Positions 1 to 64,000 of a stretch of DNA of 64,000 nucleotides are shown here, one piece after another (position 1 is the first letter of the stretch; each line of letters begins with the position of its first letter). A program made the position numbers and the translations under genes. The notes beneath the pieces were generated by a model that searched no databases, was not told where the DNA came from, and saw nothing but the letters and a program-made list of their open reading frames with translations. Source of the stretch: Haliotis rubra (Eukaryota); NCBI RefSeq assembly GCF_003918875.1, contig NW_025767587.1, forward strand, positions 186,001 to 250,000, written 5' to 3'.

Positions 1-2370
1 TTCATCGCCTCGTTTCTCGTCACCGTATCCATCGCCTCCTTTCTCGTCACCGTATCCATCGCCTCCTTTCTCGTCACCGTATCCATCGCCTCCTTTCTCG
101 TCATCGTATTCATCGCCTTCTTTCTCATCATCGTAATCATCACTTCCTTTCTCGTCACCGTATTCATCGCCTTTCTCGTCACCGTCATCATCGCCTTCCT
201 TCTCATCACCGTATTCATCGCCTCCTTTCTCGTCATTGTATTCATTGCCTCCTTTCTCGTCATTGTATTCATCGTCTTCTTTCTCGTCACCGTAATTATC
301 GTTGCGTTCATCATCGTCGTAATCATCGAGTTTTTCCTCATCACCGTATTCATCGTCTTCCTCATGACCGTAGTCATCGTCTCTAAAATCCTCATCGTAA
401 TCGCCATCGTATTCATCGTCATCTTCCTCATCGTCGTAATCGTCGAACATTTTATCATCATCGTAATCATCGTCATCTTCATCGCCATCATAATAGTCGC
501 TTTCTTCATCGTAACTATAGTCATCGCTTCCTTCCTTGTCACCGTATTCATCACCTCCTACATCACCATGGCCACGTTCCTCCTCGTCGTCTGCGTCGGC
601 TCCTTCAGAAGCACCGTTTGCGTCTCCCTCATCGGCACCATCAGCATCGGCACTTCTCTTTCTCCTGACATGCCTCTTCTCCCCGTGTGCCATCTTCCTC
701 TGAGAATTAAGGTCTGTGTCCATGTCATCCTCTTCTCCGAAGCTGTTTATCCCTATTCTTCTCCCAGCACCAATGCTCTCCTCATCATCCAGAACGTCAC
801 GTGGGTAGGGGGCCTTTTTAAGATGCCGTTGCTTGTTCCTCCCTGGTCGTTTTCTGACGTGGCCCCTGGGGCGTTTGATCTGCATCTCATCAGGGCGTGG
901 CGGTGGGGTGGGAGAGGCACAGGTCTCCTGTCTGGTGGTCTTTTCTGGACACTCCTCGCCTCCTGTGGAGAGTGTCAGATGTACGGTGCGCGTCCCCGTC
1001 GTCTCATCACAGGCTCCCCAGGGTCCCTCTTTGTACTGGCAGTGTTCTCCTACAACAGACACAGGTTCACAGTGATACTTCCGTAACCTCGTGGGGCGAT
1101 GGGTTACCCCTGTGGTCAAAGTGTTCGCTCGTCACGCCGAAGACCCGGGTTCGATTCCCTAAATGGGTACAATGTGTGAATCCCATTTCTGGTATCCCCC
1201 GCCGTGATATTGCTGGAATATCGGCGTAAAACTGAACAAGCGACTTATAACTGAACCAACAGCGCAGATCGATGCTCATGAAGCTGATCACAGGATTGTC
1301 TGGTCCGGACTCGATTATTTACAGACCGCCGCCATTAAAGGTGGAATGTTTCTAATTGTGGCGTAAAACTAAACTCACTCATTCACACGTAACATGATAT
1401 CAAAATATTTCTATCCCACATTTCCCCGATGGGATAAAACAAATACTATTACACAGAAAAGACCCAGGTCAGCTTGATCTTATTATCTTATTTTGTTTTA
1501 AATTTCCGTAGCCAAGCGACTCCATTTACATTTTAAATATTGATATATTTTTCCACTTGACCTAAATTGTAAAATTTCATAAAAATTAGTTACACTTTAC
1601 GTGAATTTCATTCTTTCTGTTATTTTTCATTCAATTTATACTTTTTCGCTTGTCCGATCTCTTGCTAAATAAGGCTTGAGTTGAGAAACAAAAATCACGG
1701 ATTGTCTAACTCGCTTTTCCCATTTTATACTGGATAACACTATCGTTCCACATGCAATACATTTTCCAGGATCAAATACTCAGTAACACAAATCTACACA
1801 GAGGATTATTTTGAGGCTATCTGTTCATCTGGCCTTACGACGTCAAAGATTATTGTTAAAAAATACCCGACTGAAAATTTCAATCTTTTCTGATCACGTG
1901 ATATGCATGACCATTATGTTTGTCAAGAAAGTTCAAATGTATTTTTCATACATAGTATTTGTTTTGTATCTTTCGCCATGGCGATGGTGAATAGTAAATA
2001 TCCCTAGCATTAATATCTATGTATTAAACACGACTGAAACATGTTAATACTTACGATAAAAGTACGCTTTGCAATAAAAGGGCCAGAAAGAGTAAGTTTA
2101 TTTCAATAAAGTTGTGTGGAAGTTGAATGGAATTACGTAAATTCTTCGACTTATCCGTAGTTCGATACATGACTAAAAGGAATACGTAGGGACCAGTTTC
2201 TACTTCGAGACAAATGTAAGTTCGACTCATCTATGTTCGACACAACAGTGTTTCGGTGTATAACAACAGCATAAACAACAATGACAGGGTTTACCTGGTG
2301 TCATAGGCTTCTGCTCGGTGGTGATCACAAAGAATACCAAGATGGCGGAACATACCGATAATCCGCCCAT
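1..2370 (-). CDS. Secreted protein: pleiotrophin/midkine-like Cys4 domain, basic linker, furin site, Asp/Glu/Gly/Tyr-rich repeat tail (3' end outside window)
   Basis: Exon 2370-2295 reads MGGLSVCSAILVFFVITTEQKPMTP+G, then a GTAAAC donor (phase 1). Exon 1049-<1 follows a TGTAG acceptor and reads GEHCQYKEGPWGACDETTGTRTVHLTLSTGGEECPEKTTRQETC...HVRRKRSADADG...(GYGDEKGGD)n, open to the window edge. Probable non-coding exon ends at 4484 (GTAAGT). Confidence 0.85.
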
Positions 2371-4989: not shown

Positions 4990-6860
4990 GTACCCGTTAC
5001 TGGGTGTCAATACATTGCAACCCGTAACTGGGTGTCTGGGTGTCAATACACTGCAGGTACCCTTTACTGGGTGTCGAAAACACTGCAGGTACCAGTTTCT
5101 GGGTGTCGAAAACATTGCAGGTACCCGTTTCTGGGTGTCGAAAACACTGCAGGTACCAGTTTATTGGTGTCGAAAACACTGCAGGTACCCGTTTCAGATT
5201 GCTGACAACACTGCAGGTACCTGTTAGAGATTATTGACAACACTGCAGGTACCCGTTACAGACTGTTGACAACACTGCAGATACCTGTCACAGATTGTTG
5301 ACAACACTGCAGGTACCCGTTACAGATTGCTTACAACACTGCACGTACCCGTTACAGATTGCTGACAACACTGCAGGTACCCGTTACATACTGTTGACAA
5401 CACTGCAGATACCTGTCACAGATTGTTGACAACACTGCAGGTACCCGTCACAGATTGCTGACAACACTGCAGATACATGTAACAGATTGTTGACAACACT
5501 GCAGGTACCCGTTACAGATTGTTGACAACACTGCAGATACCCGTTACAGATCGTTGACAACACTGCAGGTACCCATTACAGATTATTGACAACACTACAG
5601 GTACCCATTACAGATTGTTGACAACACTGCAGGTACCCGTTACAGATTGCTGACAACACAGCAGATGCACGTTACAGATTGTTGACAACACTGCAGGTAC
5701 TTGTAACAGGGTGTCGACAGCCCCATGGGTACCCGTTATAGAGTCGAGAAAACCCAGCAGATACCCGCTGAACATGCTGACTAGACCTCGGGTACCGCTA
5801 AGGCGTTACAGGAGTGGACTGGATTGCAGCTACACGTTACAGGAGTGGACTGGATTGCAGCTACACGTTACAGGAGTGGACTGGATTGCAGCTACACGTT
5901 ACAGGAGTGGACTGGATTGCAGCTACACGTTACAGGAGTGGACTGGATTGCAGCTACACGTTATAGGAGTGGACTGGATTGCAGCTACACGTTACAGGAG
6001 TGGACTGAATTGAAGCTACACGTTACAGGAGTGAACTGGATTGCAACTACACGCAGGTACAGGTTAGATGGACTGGATTGCAGCTAAACGTTACAGGAGT
6101 GAACTGGATTGCAGCTACACGTTACAGGAGTGGACTGGATTGCAGCTACTCGTTACAGGAGAGAACTGGATTGCAGCTACACGTTACATGAGTGGACTGA
6201 ATTGCAGCTACACGTTACAGGAGTGAACTGGATTGCAGCTACACGTTACAGGAGTGGACTGGATTGCAGCTACTCGTTACAGGAGTGGACTGGATTGCAG
6301 CTACACGTTACAGGAGTGGACTGGATTGCAGCTACACGTTATAGGAGTGGACTGGATTGCAGCTACACGTTACAGGAGTGGACTGAATTGAAGCTACACG
6401 TTACAGGAGTGAACTGGATTGCAACTACACGTTACAGGAGTGGACTGGATTGCAGCTAAACGTTACAGGAGTGAACTGGATTGCAGCTACACGTTACAGG
6501 AGTGGACTGGATTGCAGCTACTCGTTACAGGAGAGAACTGGATTGCAGCTACACGTTACATGAGTGGACTGAATTGCAGCTACACGTTACAGGAGTGAAC
6601 TGGATTGCAGCTACACGTTACAGGAGTGGACTGGATTGCAGCTACTCGTTACAGGAGTGGACTGGATTGAAGCTACTCGTTACATGAGTGAACTGGATTG
6701 CAGCTACTCGTTACAGGAGTTGACTGTAGTGAAGGTACCGCAGAAGAGCTCGAAAACACTGCAGGTACCCGTAACTGGGTGTCGAAAACACTGCAGGTAC
6801 CCGTTGCAGATTCTTGACAACACTGCAGGTACCCGGTGAACGCGTTGAGAACAGTGCAGG
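4990..6860. repeat. Compound minisatellite: 32-bp array interrupted by a 31-bp array (5805-6725)
   Basis: Units AACACTGCAGGTACCCGTTACAGATTGTTGAC and GTTACAGGAGTGGACTGGATTGCAGCTACAC. Confidence 0.95.
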
Positions 6861-28434: not shown

Positions 28435-29852
28435 TACTGAGTCAAGAAAGAAACTTCAATAATGAATAATTTTTCTCTGATGATACATCTATGTATCCGA
28501 AATGGGATCCCTATCTTTCGACTCTAGAAAAACGTTAGCAAAACCCACTCAAACCCATCCATTTGTCGTGCAAATGACGTTAGCGCCAAATCAGGTTTTG
28601 CACGTGCAGTCGATCACGTCGATCTTCGCATCGAAGTTTTCTTCATATGCACGTGTTTGCATTGGCCTCAAGAATTGAAAAAAACACTTTTAAACCACAG
28701 TTCAAACGGTACTTGAAATGCCACGATTGTCAAATGTGCAACGTGAACGTGCCGTTGGCATGTTGCAAGCTGGAAGATCAGTTATTGACGTCGCAAGAGC
28801 AATGGGATGCGGCCGTCGTACTGTGTATGACTTGCGAGGTCGTCTACAACAAACTGGCACCACTTCTGATAGCCCAAGGTCGGGTCGTCCACGTGTGACG
28901 TCACGAGCGGAAGACCGTCAAATCGTGCTACGTCACCTACGTGACAGATTTCTGCCGGTTACACGAACCAGGGCTGAGATGTTTAGAGGTCGACTGTCCT
29001 CACAGACCATTCGAAATCGGTTGCGGGCTGCCAATCTCCATTCTCGACGTCCATGTCGTGGGCCAATATTGACGCCGTTTCATCAACGTAAACGTCTGCT
29101 GTGGGCCCAACGTCACCTCCGATGGACCCAGAGAGACTGGAATCGAGTTGTCTTTAGCGATGAATCCAGGTTTACCCTCAGATTCGCGGACGGCAGGCAT
29201 AGAGCCTGTAGACGACGTCGTGAACGGTATGCCCAATGTTGTGTACAGGAAGTCGACAGATTCGGGGGCGGAAGTTGCATGGTGTGGGGTGCTTTCTGTG
29301 GGAACAACCGTTCCCGACTTCTGGTCATCCGTGGAAACCTCACAGCTGCTGCTTACCGCGACCAGGTGCTCACCCCTGAACTGATTGCGGCTCATGGTGT
29401 CTAAAGTTCCAGCATGATAATGCTGGCCGCATACCGCGATGTTGACACGAAATTTTCTTCAAAACGCTGGAATCAACGTCATGGACTGGCCATCGAGGTC
29501 CCCTGATATTGAACTGAGAAACTTCGCAACCTTTAATTCTTGTGACTTGACATTCTGCAGAATCCCCAACCACGTGTTCACAAGCATCAGGCAGTCGATG
29601 AGGAGACGGCTGTGGTGAATGAGTAGCCTAATGATATTGAACTGATTATTTTTATTCTTGGCTTGACATTCTGTATACCCATGTTTTGGAACGGCTGTGT
29701 ACCCTAATCGAAATGATTATGGCACTGTCAGTGTATCGAGTACATCACACAGATCTCAGCAATGAAATAATAACAATTTAACCATCTTACCATCTCTTGT
29801 TCTTTTACAGTGCCCTGAAGACAGAATGTGAAGTTTCTTTTTTGACTCAGTA
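28435..29852 (+). mobile_element. Tc1/mariner DNA transposon, defective
   Basis: TIRs TACTGAGTCAAGAAAGAAACTTCA / TGAAGTTTCTTTTTTGACTCAGTA enclose a transposase ORF. Confidence 0.9.
28718..29510 (+). pseudogene. Tc1-like transposase, truncated
   Basis: HTH start MPRLSNVQRERAVGML, GRPR and VFSDESRF motifs; stop at 29404, then out-of-frame FQHDNA and WPSRSPD; C-terminus missing. Confidence 0.88.
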
Positions 29853-36896: not shown

Positions 36897-38206
36897 NNNN
36901 NNNNNNNNNNNNNNNNNNNNNNNNNNNNNNNNNNNNNNNNNNNNNNNNNNNNNNNNNNNNNNNNNNNNNNNNNNNNNNNNNNNNNNNNNNNNNNNNNNNN
37001 NNNNNNNNNNNNNNNNNNNNNNNNNNNNNNNNNNNNCTGCTTCATATTAGCTGCGATAAAGATCGGTTAATGATGTAATAAGAACTCACAATTATGAATT
37101 ACCAAATGGTACACTGCCTTGGAAACCAGCGTAAGTTGATGCAGTAGACATTTGTTTTTGGTGAATAAGACCAGTTATACAGCCAGGTTTTCACTTATTT
37201 CATGGGAAAGTTAGTTCTTCAATGCTGTTGATTGAAACATACTCATATGAAACCTTTCCTTGCTCATACTCCAACTGTACACACTCATTAGATTATATAA
37301 GAAAAGGTTCCAAATATAACATCCATGGACATAAACGTTTTGGAGAGTTTTGTTGTTTTTTCAGGTGTTAACATTATCTTGGCCGTCAAGAGGTTCACAA
37401 AAGGTATATTCATGACATGGTGAACTGAACATAAGGTGTCATCTTGCTAAGCCATCGCTTTCCGCATAAAGCCACTTCGTGTCACTTTAAAGTGACCGCA
37501 CACCTTGCAGTACAGATCTTCAGATTGAGCTATTTGTTGGGAATCTATAAAAGCAGAAATGAGATTCATTGCCAAAATCGTTCACCCAAACAATCAATAT
37601 GGACGACCGATAGAAATCAGCTTTAATGTGTCAACCAACTGGACAAGAAGAAAACCTCTGTGGCACCACTTAGGAGCTGGAGCTGGAGCTGGGGGTCAGG
37701 TCGTAGACGGAGTGCCTGAAGCACTCGGCGACGGAGCGGATGTCGTGGTATTTGGTGCGGAGCTCGCTGAGGCTGCTCTTGCTCTCGCCAGTGTGGGCTT
37801 GGATCTGCTGGTAGATCTGGTNNNNNNNNNNNNNNNNNNNNNNNNNNNNNNNNNNNNNNNNNNNNNNNNNNNNNNNNNNNNNNNNNNNNNNNNNNNNNNN
37901 NNNNNNNNNNNNNNNNNNNNNNNNNNNNNNNNNNNNNNNNNNNNNNNNNNNNNNNNNNNNNNNNNNNNNNNNNNNNNNNNNNNNNNNNNNNNNNNNNNNN
38001 NNNNNNNNNNNNNNNNNNNNNNNNNNNNNNNNNNNNNNNNNNNNNNNNNNNNNNNNNNNNNNNNNNNNNNNNNNNNNNNNNNNNNNNNNNNNNNNNNNNN
38101 NNNNNNNNNNNNNNNNNNNNNNNNNNNNNNNNNNNNNNNNNNNNNNNNNNNNNNNNNNNNNNNNNNNNNNNNNNNNNNNNNNNNNNNNNNNNNNNNNNNN
38201 NNNNNN
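36897..38206. other. Two assembly gaps (36897-37036, 37822-38206)
   Basis: N runs. Confidence 1.
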
Positions 38207-53754: not shown

Positions 53755-55014
53755 ATGAAGTGGTACCTGCTGGCCGTGTGCGTCATCCTCCTTGGACAAG
53801 GAGAAGCTACGCCTGTGGAAGGTAGGTATCCCGGGGTGTTTAATGGTTGGTGGGGTAGCCGACACGGGTAAACGTTTGCCAATCAAGTCGGATTCGACTT
53901 CGTCACTTGGTGCAATGTTTGACGTCATTGTTGTTGTCCGTCACAGTGGTGATGCGTGGTCATGGCGACGTTGAATGTCGGACGTGTTCCAGAACGATGA
54001 TGAACGATGGGTTAGCCTAGCGGTTATAACGTCCGTTCGTCACGCCGAAGACCCGGGTTCGATTCCCCAAATGGGTACAATGTGTGAAGCCCATTTCTGG
54101 TGTCCCCCGCCGTGATGTTGCTGGAATATTGCTAAAAGCGGCGTAAAACAATACTCACTCCAGAACGATGACTAGAGGTTCTGTGAATTCTGCTCTTCAT
54201 AGGGCTGCTTTGAGTGGGCATAATAAGCGTCTGGTTGTCTGGCTCATAAACAGAACATTGCTGGAATTTTTGTCTCGAATATGTCATGCCTCTTGCAAAT
54301 TTCGTGCAATTCGAACAACATCTCGATTGCTTTTCCCAGCAACTCCATCATGCATAAGGGCATGGATTTGGCGCATTTTAAATATGCAAATAATTTATTA
54401 TTATTTTGAATAAATATGGATTTGTCTCCTTTTTTAGGCAGACTATATTTCTCGAAGCAGTTGGTGAATTTTTGTCTCTCTTAAAAGTTCGATACTGAAT
54501 GGTTTGTCTCTCGTGTTCTCTAGACGTGCAGCCCGGGGCTCCTCAAGGTTTGTTCCGGGCAACCAGCGGTGTAGAGTACGTCAAGGATGGGGAAGAGCAG
54601 AACGACGATGCTGGCGGGAATGATGAAGATGGTGATGAAGAAAATGGCGATGATGACGAGAATAACGAAGATGAGGACGAGGAGAATGATGATGGTGGCG
54701 AAGATGATGAGAATAAGGTAGAGTCCAAAGAGGAATCATTCTGGGAAAAGTACAATGTAAGAAGACCCAAAAACTGGAAAAAGATGGGCCATAAGCGAAG
54801 GCATCGTTACAAAAAAGAAATTATGGAAAAGGCAGAGAAGCATGGTAGATCAGAGAACAAAGGCGGTAAGAAGATATCACGGAAGGCAAAGAAGATGATG
54901 GACATTGGGAAAGAACTCATAAAAGGTAGCCATAAATTGAAAGAGGCCGGGCAGGAAATCCGCAGCATGGCGGAAGACGTTGCACGTATTGTTAAACGTT
55001 TTCGCTCAGATTAG
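53755..55014 (+). CDS. Secreted 185-aa protein with acidic D/E/N block and Lys/Arg-rich helical C-terminus
   Basis: Exon 53755-53821 reads MKWYLLAVCVILLGQGEATPVE+G, then GTAGGT (phase 1). Exon 54524-55014 follows a TCTCTAG acceptor and is in frame. AATAAA at 55041. Confidence 0.87.
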
Positions 55015-62437: not shown

Positions 62438-63745
62438 CTCATCATCTCTCAACACCCATTAAATGCCCCTCCAATACACCCTTCAGTACTCATCGACACA
62501 CCTCATCATCTCTCAACACCCATTAAATGCCCCTCCAATACACCCTTCAGTACTCATCTCTCAACACCCACACCCCTCATCATCTTCTCAACACCCATCA
62601 TAAATGCCCATTAAATGCCCCTCCAATACACCCTTCAGTACTCATCGACACACCTCATCATCTCTCAACACCCATTAAATGCCCCTCCAATACACCCTTC
62701 AGTACTCATCGACACACCTCATCATCTCTCAACACCCATTAAATGCCCCTCCAATACACCCTTCAGTACTCATCGACACACCTCATCATCTCTCAACACC
62801 CATTAAATGCCCCTCCAATACACCCTTCAGTACTCATCGACACACCTCATCTCTCAACACCCATTAAATGCCCCTCAATACACCCTTCAGTACTCATCGA
62901 CACACCTCATCATCTCAACACCCATTAAATGCCCTCAATACACCCTTCAGTACTCATCACCACACCTCATCATCTCTCAACACCCATTAAATGCCCTCCA
63001 ATACACCCTTCAGTACTCATCGACACACCTCATCATCTCTCAACACCCATTAAATGCCCTCCAATACACCCTTCAGTACTCATCGACACACCTCATCATC
63101 TCTCAACACCCATTAAATGCCCTCCAATACACCCTTCAGTACTCATCGACACACCTCATCATCTCTCAACACCCATTAAATGCCCCTCCAATACACCCTT
63201 CAGTACTCATCGACACACCTCATCATCTCTCAACACCCATTAAATGCCCTCCAATACACCCTTCAGTACTCATCGACACACCTCATCATCTCTCAACACC
63301 CATTAAATGCCCCTCCAATACACCCTTCAGTACTCATCGACACACCTCATCATCTCTCAACACCCATTAAATGCCCCTCCAATACACCCTTCCAGTACTC
63401 ATCGACACACCTCATCATCTCTCAACACCCATTAAATGCCCTCCAATACACCCTTCAGTACTCATCGACACACCTCATCATCTCTCAACACCCATTAAAT
63501 GCCCCTCCAATACACCCTTCAGTACTCATCGACACACCTCATCATCTCTCAACACCCATTAAATGCCCCTCCAATACACCCTTCAGTACTCATCGACACA
63601 CCTCATCATCTCTCAACACCCATTAAATGCCCCTCCAATACACCCTTCAGTACTCATCGACACACCTCATCATCTCTCAACACCCATTAAATGCCCCTCC
63701 AATACACCCTTCAGTACTCATCGACACACCTCATCATCCCTCAAC
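62438..63745. repeat. ~64-bp minisatellite in BL6 intron 3
   Basis: CCTCATCATCTCTCAACACCCATTAAATGCCCCTCCAATACACCCTTCAGTACTCATCGACACA x ~20. Confidence 0.95.
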
Positions 63746-64000
63746 ACCTTAAAAAACACCCACTACATGCTCCAACATCCCTTCTACCCCTTTACACCTC
63801 TCAACACATCTGACACGCTTCAACACCCACCATCGAAAATCAACGCTGCTCAACGCTCATCAGCATTCCCGAGCACTAAAAACCAATCCTCAACGCTATT
63901 CATTGCTCTTCAACGCACTCACAACGCTCCTCGACAAACACACACACACACGCCATCATACCTCAACAGGGCGCTTGGGTAGCCTAGTGGTTAAAGCGTG

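What the first reader, a model, noticed from the sequence alone, without database searches (positions are those of the whole stretch)
1..1049. Pleiotrophin/midkine-like domain fused via a furin site to a hyper-acidic Tyr repeat
Seen on the minus strand (missed by the ORF track because it runs off the edge): CQYKEGPWGACDETTGTRTVHLTLSTGGEECPEKTTRQETC, then an Arg/Lys/Pro linker, RRKR-SA, and more than 200 aa of D/E/G/Y with a 27-bp GYGDEKGGD/EYGDEKGGD repeat. Known: the midkine C-domain pattern is CKY..WGACD..TGT..R..L..C..T..C; PTN/MK proteins bind heparin and have basic tails; RxKR is the furin consensus. Inference: cleavage separates a polyanion-binding module from a Ca-binding polyanion whose Tyr residues could be sulfated or hydroxylated. 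This is an unusual architecture and a biomineral/adhesive candidate.
Basis: partly seen in the sequence, partly recalled or inferred. Interest (0 to 1): 0.72.

Follow-up and report, generated by a model that had tools for sequence, protein, structure and literature searches.

The report
Abalone midkine-domain protein with acidic tail
An abalone genome holds an apparently unannotated gene for a secreted protein that joins one small midkine-type domain, which has lost its usual positive charge, through a cut-site motif to a very long acidic, tyrosine-studded repeat; the design is unusual but its job is still unknown.

Summary
On the minus strand a 76-nt exon (2370-2295: ATG plus a hydrophobic signal-like peptide) can splice in phase (GT/AG) to an exon (1049-1) that stays open for 349 codons and runs off the window.

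- **Domain.** The first 45 residues are a real PTN/midkine C-type domain: Pfam PF01091 scores 29-31 bits (cutoff 25.3), all four Cys are in register, the AlphaFold2 model has pLDDT 91, and the top four Foldseek PDB hits are pleiotrophin and midkine.
- **Rest of the exon.** A Pro hinge, a 23-residue polybasic cluster, a mixed-charge stretch and a single RRKR|S motif follow. Then come at least 218 residues that are 51% D/E, 18% G and 10% Y, with a 9-residue (27-bp) period.
- **Interpretation, partly supported.** The domain is the most acidic of 91 related units (net -3) and has lost 5 of 6 conserved basic positions. The "polyanion-binding module" therefore reduces to the basic cluster.
- **Relatives.** No orthologue or similar architecture appeared in a 1.84-billion-protein library that includes abalone RefSeq.
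- **Shell link.** The motifs tried are absent from the held text of a deep greenlip-abalone shell proteome.
- **Untested.** Cleavage, Tyr sulfation, the splice junction and the C-terminus.

This is a new architectural variant of a known domain family, of moderate interest. The scan had already noted another midkine-domain mosaic gene elsewhere in this genome.

The parts
2295..2370 (-). Candidate first coding exon: an ATG in a good context (A at -3, G at +4) and 25 codons plus 1 nt. It encodes a signal-peptide-like N-terminus with a 13-residue hydrophobic core. An acceptor-like tract just upstream of the ATG suggests a further 5' UTR exon.
   Evidence: sequence, donor CAG|GTAAAC at 2295/2294. 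(mean Kyte-Doolittle 2.88 over residues 4-16). No signal-peptide predictor and no RNA read were available, so this part is inferred.
1050..2294 (-). Intron (GT..AG, phase 1) holding a tRNA-derived SINE copy at about 1100-1395.
   Evidence: One search shows very high contig depth only over 1045-1392 (repeat family) and none over the unique intron at 1480-2290.
1..1049 (-). Large coding exon, open for 349 codons and running off the window edge. The 3' end of the gene was not seen.
   Evidence: Short RNA-like contigs of a related sample cover 84-938 at about 96-97% identity with one in-frame 3-nt deletion.
919..1041 (-). PTN/midkine C-type (TSR-like) domain with C-x9-C-x19-C-x9-C spacing. It is an acidic variant with net charge -3.
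   Evidence: Pfam PF01091 at 29.0 and 31.2 bits against a cutoff of 25.3. PDB phmmer finds midkine-b 2luu, midkine 1mkc and pleiotrophin. Alignment A1 has C3, C13, C33 and C43 invariant, and Y5, W10, L26 and G29 at 90% or more. AlphaFold2 pLDDT 91 with three strands. Foldseek top four are 8voi, 2lut, 2luu and 2n6f, TM 0.56-0.80. Charge comparison.
814..882 (-). Polybasic cluster (exon residues 56-78: 11 K/R plus 2 H in 23 residues) after a Pro-rich hinge. It is the counterpart of the basic tails of midkine and pleiotrophin.
   Evidence: linker residues 46-131: K+R 23, D+E 14.
655..666 (-). RRKR, followed by Ser-Ala: a furin/proprotein-convertase consensus at the boundary between the linker and the polyacidic tail.
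   Evidence: the only R-x-[KR]-R in the exon. The one difference at these codons in the related sample is synonymous (661 T>C, AGA>AGG). Cleavage itself is inferred.
1..654 (-). Polyacidic Asp/Glu/Gly/Tyr tail of at least 218 residues with net charge -95. It carries 22 Tyr, mostly every ninth residue; 16 have D/E at -1 and 18 have 4 or more acidic residues within +/-5.
1..383 (-). 27-bp (9-codon) tandem array, 14.4 copies, with a 159-bp higher-order period. The three units nearest the window edge are identical.

Best explanation
This is the 5' two-thirds or less of a real, lineage-restricted abalone gene for a secreted bipartite protein.

**Shown**
- A signal-like exon can splice in phase to a long open exon.
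- That exon begins with a well-formed midkine/pleiotrophin C-type domain.
- The domain has been stripped of the family's basic surface.
- A polybasic cluster, one RRKR|S motif and a 9-residue-periodic polyacidic Tyr repeat of at least 218 residues follow.

**Inferred mechanism**
- The precursor enters the secretory pathway.
- A furin-type convertase cuts after RRKR in the trans-Golgi.
- Golgi tyrosylprotein sulfotransferase modifies many of the Tyr residues, which sit in textbook acidic contexts.
- The result is a small disulfide-locked N-fragment carrying a basic patch, plus a long carboxylate/sulfate polyanion.
- The polyanion binds Ca2+ and basic partners in an extracellular matrix or secretion.
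- The two fragments can stay associated through the basic cluster, as the two halves of the nacre protein Pif stay in one complex.

Which secretion it serves (shell, mucus, other matrix) is not known.
For: - Domain identity.
- Gene structure.
- Open frame and composition.
- Coding-phase repeat.
- A related sample carries contigs over the exon only (84-938), not over the unique intron. They show an in-frame 3-nt deletion and an unchanged RRKR.
- The closest relatives are secreted multi-domain midkine-type proteins.
- A cleaved precursor giving a matrix-binding part and an acidic mineral-binding part has a precedent in Pif 97 / Pif 80 (PMC5379566).
- Sulfotyrosine-rich acidic stretches acting as heparin mimics that bind basic clusters have a precedent in fibromodulin and osteoadherin (PMC7310474).
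Against: - No read spans the 2295|1049 junction, and exon 1 and the domain itself (939-1049) have no contig cover.
- The runs are only guessed to be RNA.
- The protein is absent from a library that holds Haliotis rubra and H. asinina RefSeq proteins, so no annotation pipeline has called it.
- Constraint outside the domain is weak. There are 15 non-synonymous and 5 synonymous differences to the related sample (pN/pS about 0.65), and about 0.7 between repeat units.
- The expected tryptic peptide and the other motifs are absent from the held text of the H. laevigata shell proteome supplements.
- The C-terminus is unseen. An ER-retention signal or a membrane anchor there would change the picture.
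Confidence: 0.45

Rival explanations
1. It is a cytokine- or prohormone-type precursor. The useful product is the roughly 100-residue N-terminal midkine-like fragment, released by a prohormone convertase. The long acidic Tyr-rich part is a granin-like pro-region that condenses with Ca2+ in secretory granules and neutralises the basic cluster during transport.
For: The single RRKR sits directly before the acidic part, and there are further dibasic pairs in the linker. The N-terminal disulfide domain, long acidic Tyr-rich region and dibasic sites resemble the layout of chromogranins and secretogranins (own knowledge, not tested). The relatives are growth-factor-type proteins.
Against: The domain has lost the basic residues through which midkine-type factors bind their proteoglycan receptors. 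The acidic part (net -95 or lower) far exceeds what is needed to neutralise a patch of about +11. No tissue information is available.
Confidence: 0.2
2. It is a dedicated shell-matrix protein, a functional analogue of Pif, aspein or asprich. The acidic repeat nucleates or inhibits CaCO3, and the N-part anchors it to the organic framework.
For: Abalone build nacre. The tail has Asp-rich, disordered, tandem-repeat composition typical of acidic shell proteins (general description in PMC6003135). The Pif precursor is cleaved in the same way.
Against: None of the motif strings tried (GDEKGG, YGDEK, DEYGD, WGACD) occurs in 6.2 million characters of held supplements of the deep H. laevigata shell proteome, and DDYDD occurs only once, in a different sequence. 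Its two Asp-rich major proteins are different sequences. No literature link exists. Caveats: some files were cut when stored, that study searched transcriptome-derived databases, and sulfated peptides would be missed.
Confidence: 0.15
3. The protein is not cleaved, and the acidic tail works in cis. It folds back on the polybasic cluster as a built-in heparin mimic and keeps the protein soluble or auto-inhibited until a competing polycation or Ca2+ opens it.
For: Oppositely charged segments lie on one chain. Sulfotyrosine acidic stretches bind basic clusters of heparin-binding proteins (PMC7310474).
Against: RRKR followed by Ser in a secreted, disordered linker is a near-ideal convertase site and would be hard to protect. 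The motif is unchanged in the related sample.
Confidence: 0.07
4. It is a decaying or never-functional locus: a stray midkine-domain exon next to an expanding 27-bp minisatellite that happens to stay in frame. The gene model would then be an artefact.
For: It is not present in any protein set searched, although abalone RefSeq proteins are in that library. Substitution pattern outside the domain is near-neutral. No junction read exists.
Against: All defining residues of the domain are intact and it folds with high confidence. There are 349 stop-free codons in a codon set (GAA, GAG, TAC, TAT, AAA, GGA) that lies one mutation from stops. The signal-like exon has consensus splice sites in the right phase. 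An in-frame indel and exon-only cover are seen in a second sample.
Confidence: 0.13

Closest known systems
Invertebrate multi-domain midkine/pleiotrophin-like proteins (Miple-type). Example: P0009, whose unit 123-163 is the best match at 20/41 identities.
   Same: Same domain type (PF01091). Identical Cys spacing and the C-x-Y...W-G/S-x-C-D...T-L-T-L...G core. Secreted.
   Different: Those proteins carry 3-9 tandem, strongly basic units (mean net +3.6 per unit) and no acidic repeat. This protein has one acidic unit (-3), then a convertase motif and a polyanionic tail.
Vertebrate midkine and pleiotrophin (PDB 1mkc, 2lut, 2luu, 2n6f, 8voi)
   Same: The C-domain fold is shared: three antiparallel strands, two disulfides, TM 0.56-0.80 to the model. 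A basic segment directly follows the domain, like their Lys-rich tails.
   Different: There is no PTN_MK_N domain. The basic heparin-binding positions of the domain are mostly replaced. More than 200 acidic residues are appended.
Haliotis rubra 'neogenin-like' XP_046583259.1 (P0016), the midkine-FN3 mosaic noted earlier by this scan
   Same: It is another abalone gene that re-uses PTN_MK_C units in a new architecture.
   Different: It has three basic units fused to FN3 domains, with no acidic repeat and no convertase-bounded tail.
Pif (Pinctada fucata nacre protein; precursor cleaved into Pif 97 and Pif 80)
   Same: Design only: one secreted precursor is cleaved after translation into a framework-binding part and an acidic part with aragonite-binding activity (PMC5379566).
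   Different: No sequence or domain relationship. Pif 97 has VWA and chitin-binding domains, which are absent here. No evidence places this protein in shell.
Sulfotyrosine-rich acidic extensions of fibromodulin and osteoadherin (class II SLRPs)
   Same: Clusters of Tyr in Asp/Glu context. In those proteins the clusters are sulfated and act as heparin mimics that bind basic clusters of heparin-binding proteins (PMC7310474).
   Different: Those are short N-terminal stretches on LRR proteins. Here the stretch is a tandem repeat of at least 218 residues, and its sulfation is only predicted from sequence context.

Membership tests
PTN/MK family, C-terminal domain (Pfam PF01091) | Score above Pfam's gathering threshold | tested here: met
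   29.0 bits for the whole exon and 31.2 bits for the domain alone, against a cutoff of 25.3.
PTN/MK family, C-terminal domain (Pfam PF01091) | Four Cys in register (two disulfides) plus the conserved aromatic and Trp core | tested here: met
   In the 45-sequence alignment A1, C3, C13, C33 and C43 are invariant, and Y5, W10, L26 and G29 are at 90% or more. All are present here.
PTN/MK family, C-terminal domain (Pfam PF01091) | Three-stranded antiparallel sheet superposable on solved midkine and pleiotrophin C-domains | tested here: met
   AlphaFold2 pLDDT 91 with strands 4-10, 19-28 and 36-42. Foldseek ranks 1-4 are 8voi_B, 2lut, 2luu and 2n6f with probability 0.98-1.00 and TMq 0.56-0.80, and generic TSRs rank lower. 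The E-values are only 0.02-0.14 because the domain is so short.
PTN/MK family, C-terminal domain (Pfam PF01091) | Basic surface clusters that bind heparin and chondroitin sulfate | tested here: not met
   Net charge is -3, against a mean of +3.6 and a minimum of -2 in 90 related units. Five of the six columns that are K/R in at least 60% of same-length relatives are Q, E, V, S and E here. Binding itself was not measured.
Vertebrate-type midkine/pleiotrophin cytokines | Two-domain layout PTN_MK_N + PTN_MK_C with a short basic tail, about 120-170 residues in total | tested here: not met
   Only one domain was found in the exon or anywhere in the window. At least 300 further residues follow it.
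Thrombospondin type-1 repeat (Pfam TSP1 families) | Score above threshold | tested here: not met
   The only TSP1 family listed, TSP1_spondin, scored 13.6-18.3 bits against a cutoff of 41. The single Trp in the domain rules out a multi-Trp ladder. The resemblance is at fold-superfamily level only (ranks 5-14).
Furin/proprotein-convertase substrates | R-x-K/R-R motif in an accessible segment of a secretory protein | tested here: met
   RRKR followed by Ser-Ala is the only such motif. It lies in a low-complexity linker.
Furin/proprotein-convertase substrates | Actual cleavage | not testable with these tools
   This needs expression or proteomics.
Tyrosylprotein sulfotransferase substrates | Tyr with an acidic residue at -1, several acidic and few basic residues within +/-5, in a secreted protein | tested here: met
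   Of 22 Tyr, 16 have D/E at -1 and 18 have 4 or more acidic residues within +/-5. The later repeat units have 2 Lys within +/-5, which is less favourable. This is a rule of thumb only; sulfation itself cannot be tested here.
Mollusc acidic shell-matrix proteins (Pif, aspein, asprich and similar) | Recovered from shell matrix, or homologous to a protein that is | tested here: not met
   No homologue was found. None of the motif strings tried matches this protein in the held H. laevigata shell-proteome supplements. The test is incomplete because it covers one species and some files were truncated.

The most novel reading that the evidence does not exclude
Abalone have turned a heparin-binding cytokine module into the head of a protein-only "glycosaminoglycan mimic". 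One precursor would yield a de-charged midkine-fold cap with a basic clasp, plus a polymer of regularly spaced (every 9 residues) sulfotyrosines and carboxylates. That polymer would organise Ca2+ or polycationic partners. One candidate partner is the Gly/Arg-rich repeat protein encoded about 5 kb upstream on the same strand. The material would be a shell, mucus or adhesive. The design would parallel Pif and coacervate-forming cement proteins but would have arisen independently.
Probability: 0.1. Interest if true: 0.75.

Novelty: new variant of a known kind. Interest (0 to 1): 0.48.

Why it matters
- Midkine/pleiotrophin domains are known as basic, glycosaminoglycan-binding cytokine modules. 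Here the fold is kept but the charge is inverted, and it is fused to a polyanion. That shows the module being re-used for something other than heparin binding.
- If the tail is sulfated at its periodic Tyr residues, it would be an unusually long and regular sulfotyrosine polymer. That would interest people working on biomineral or adhesive chemistry and on TPST biology. An expanded TPST-like gene family was noted elsewhere in this genome.
- The gene also appears to be missing from abalone annotations. This is a practical point for anyone searching abalone secretomes or shell proteomes against those databases.

Tried and rejected
- **Word-index protein searches.** Searches with the N-part, the acidic tail and the neighbouring repeat ORF were all blank. 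The neighbour search was an attempt to fetch a locus reaching past the window edge. The ORF could therefore not be extended.
- **Metagenome contig scan.** A scan with the N-part gave pattern hits but no relative.
- **Read evidence.** Only four small runs of contigs, guessed to be RNA, hold parts of the exon. They neither support nor refute the splice junction.
- **Literature.** Searches for midkine/pleiotrophin with Haliotis, shell matrix or mantle, for miple with mollusc, and for four peptide strings found nothing relevant. Pleiotrophin appears only in hen eggshell papers.
- **Rejected match.** I checked whether the Asp-rich major shell protein idb_22086 of H. laevigata is this protein. It is not: it is a D/V/A/N-rich sequence with a possible TM segment.
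- **Selection test.** Substitution counts give pN/pS of about 0.65-0.7 from very few sites. That is too weak to decide between selection and neutrality.
- The spliced exon1+exon2 protein was not joined or searched as one sequence. Each exon was handled by reference. The N runs at 36897-37036 and 37822-38206 were left untouched.
Full report
**What is in the sequence**

Read on the minus strand, window 2370-2295 carries an ATG in a good context. It is followed by 25 codons and one extra base, encoding a short hydrophobic N-terminus (13-residue core, mean Kyte-Doolittle 2.88), and it ends at a consensus donor, CAG|GTAAAC.

After a 1245-nt intron that contains a tRNA-derived SINE, a pyrimidine-rich tract ending in TAG|G opens an exon at 1049. 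With the phase-1 join (G+GA = Gly) the frame runs for 349 codons to window position 1 without a stop. Upstream of 1049 the same frame has a stop at 1134-1132 and no ATG after it, so the exon needs a spliced 5' partner.

**The domain**

Residues 2-45 of the exon translation match Pfam PTN_MK_C (PF01091) at 29.0 bits, or 31.2 bits for the domain alone, against a cutoff of 25.3. The only TSP1 family listed, TSP1_spondin, stays far below its threshold.

Against all PDB sequences, the only five matches up to E = 10 are midkine-b (2luu), midkine (1mkc), midkine-a (2lut) and two pleiotrophin chains (8voi, 2n6f).

A full HMMER scan of 1.84 billion representative proteins with the first 139 residues gave 20 hits at E of 0.001 or lower, the best at 3e-13. 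Eight of the ten I scanned with Pfam carry three to nine PTN_MK_C units; the other two showed none. The best single unit, P0009:123-163, shares 20 of 41 residues with no gap.

In a 45-sequence alignment the four Cys are invariant, and Y5, W10, L26 and G29 are at 90% or more. All are present here. AlphaFold2 on that alignment gives pLDDT 91 and three strands. Foldseek against the PDB ranks pleiotrophin C-domain, midkine-a, midkine-b and pleiotrophin first (TMq 0.56-0.80, probability 0.98-1.00), ahead of generic TSR domains. The domain call is therefore sound by profile, sequence and fold.

**What is unusual about the domain**

I extracted 90 related units from the hits. Their net charge averages +3.6 and ranges from -2 to +10. 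This unit is -3, the most acidic of all.

Among same-length relatives, six columns are K/R in at least 60% of units. This protein keeps only one of them and has Q, E, V, S and E at the other five. The fold is kept but the basic, glycosaminoglycan-binding face that defines the family's activity is largely gone.

**The rest of the exon**

- **Hinge and basic cluster.** A Pro-rich hinge leads to a 23-residue polybasic cluster (residues 56-78, window 814-882). This recalls the basic tails of midkine and pleiotrophin.
- **Mixed-charge stretch.** A mixed, partly acidic stretch follows.
- **Cut-site motif.** The only R-x-[KR]-R motif of the exon is RRKR, followed by Ser-Ala (residues 128-133, RRKR at window 655-666).
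- **Charge flip.** From there the charge flips. The remaining 218 residues are D 33%, E 18%, G 18% and Y 10%, with net charge -95.
- **Predicted N-product.** It is almost neutral at +1.
- **Repeat.** The tail is a coding-phase tandem repeat with a 27-bp period, 14.4 copies at 1-383 and a 159-bp higher order. Its 9-residue profile is [D/G/N]-D-E-K-G-G-D-[D/E/G]-Y, with Tyr invariant in 15 exact units.
- **Tyr context.** Of 22 Tyr, 16 have D/E at -1 and 18 have at least four acidic residues within five positions. That is the usual context of Golgi tyrosine sulfation. This is a rule of thumb from the literature, not a test.

**Is it a live gene?**

*For*
- The domain is intact.
- The frame is long and open in codons that lie one mutation away from stops.
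- The splice sites are consensus and in phase, and the signal-like exon fits.
- Four small 2016 runs from one study hold short contigs over the exon (84-270, 221-421, 328-639, 624-938) at about 96-97% identity. The runs are stored as contigs and guessed to be RNA. None of the four has anything on the unique intron (1480-2290).
- Those contigs carry one indel, a 3-nt in-frame deletion at 756, and leave RRKR unchanged (661 T>C is synonymous).

*Against*
- No contig covers 939-1049 or exon 1, so the junction is untested.
- Differences to that sample are 15 non-synonymous to 5 synonymous (pN/pS about 0.65), and repeat units compare at about 0.7. This means weak constraint, as expected for a disordered repeat but also compatible with drift.
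- The big library contains H. rubra and H. asinina RefSeq proteins. Even so, nothing resembling this N-terminal region beyond the generic domain was found, so the gene appears unannotated.

**Function**

None of the following could be tested here: cleavage, sulfation or hydroxylation, Ca binding, tissue of expression, and the C-terminus.

The reading I rate most likely (0.45) is a secreted precursor cut by a furin-type convertase. The products would be a small disulfide-locked fragment with a basic patch, and a long and probably sulfated polyanion that binds Ca2+ or basic partners outside the cell.

Two precedents are analogies of design, not homology:
- The nacre protein Pif is made as one precursor and cleaved into a framework-binding part and an acidic part with aragonite-binding activity (PMC5379566).
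- The sulfotyrosine-rich acidic ends of fibromodulin and osteoadherin act as heparin mimics that bind basic clusters (PMC7310474).

The specific shell-matrix idea gets no support. No paper links the domain to mollusc shells. The in-depth H. laevigata shell proteome contains neither YGDEK, which lies inside the expected tryptic peptide, nor the other motifs tried, in its held supplements. Its Asp-rich proteins are different sequences. That test is imperfect: some files were truncated, the study's database was transcriptome-derived, and sulfated peptides would escape detection.

The rivals are a prohormone/granin-like precursor (0.20), a dedicated shell-matrix protein (0.15), a decaying locus (0.13) and an uncleaved protein whose tail masks the basic cluster in cis (0.07).

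**Comparison and novelty**

It is a member of the PTN/MK C-domain family by every structural criterion. It fails the family's functional hallmark (the basic surface) and the vertebrate two-domain layout.

The combination of one acidic midkine-type unit, a convertase motif and a long periodic Asp/Glu/Tyr repeat was not seen among the relatives retrieved. I class it as a new variant of a known kind.

I re-found that protein as P0016 and confirmed its domains. Abalone therefore seem to shuffle this module repeatedly. Another note (s1-344815) reports TPST-like sulfotransferase paralogues beside a Gly/Asp/Tyr repeat gene in this genome. That is a lead for the sulfation idea and I did not test it.

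**Limits**

- The gene runs off the window and I could not fetch the neighbouring sequence. The word searches with the exon and with the neighbouring ORF were blank, as was the metagenome scan.
- The single read-laying run is spent.
- N runs in the window were left as they are.

Noticed in passing
The word search found no relative. It is a polycationic-leaning neighbour of a polyanion gene; co-expression or pairing is pure speculation.
   Followed up: partly
window about 1100-1395 (+), inside the intron: A tRNA-derived SINE copy. It draws contig depths of 5,000-95,000 in the four runs while the unique intron has none, so it belongs to a very abundant repeat family of this genome.
   Followed up: no
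window 54499-55014 (+): A 171-codon ORF with an acidic D/E/N/G block followed by a Lys/Arg-rich block (net -9). It may be an exon of another charge-block protein. It was not examined.
   Followed up: no
window 28718-29404 (+): A 228-codon ORF that looks like the N-terminal part of a Tc1/mariner-type transposase (helix-turn-helix-like start, then a DDE-like region). It is probably a transposon remnant. This is judged by eye only.
   Followed up: no
window 5711-6459 (+) and 62807-63982 (+): Tandem repeats that give long artificial ORFs (units such as ...TRYRSGLDCSYTLQEWTGLQLHVTGVDWIAA... and ...LQYTLQYSSTHLIISQHPLNA...). They are likely satellites rather than genes.
   Followed up: no
window 8-16 (-), exon residues 346-348: The last visible repeat unit has Gly replaced by Arg, which creates an R-G-D tripeptide (and a K-R pair) at the very edge of the window. 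It is a single occurrence and probably chance.
   Followed up: no
P0016 / XP_046583259.1 (Haliotis rubra) and XP_067675169.1 (H. asinina): Proteins named 'neogenin-like' in RefSeq carry three PTN_MK_C units in front of the FN3 domains. The name hides the midkine part.
   Followed up: partly
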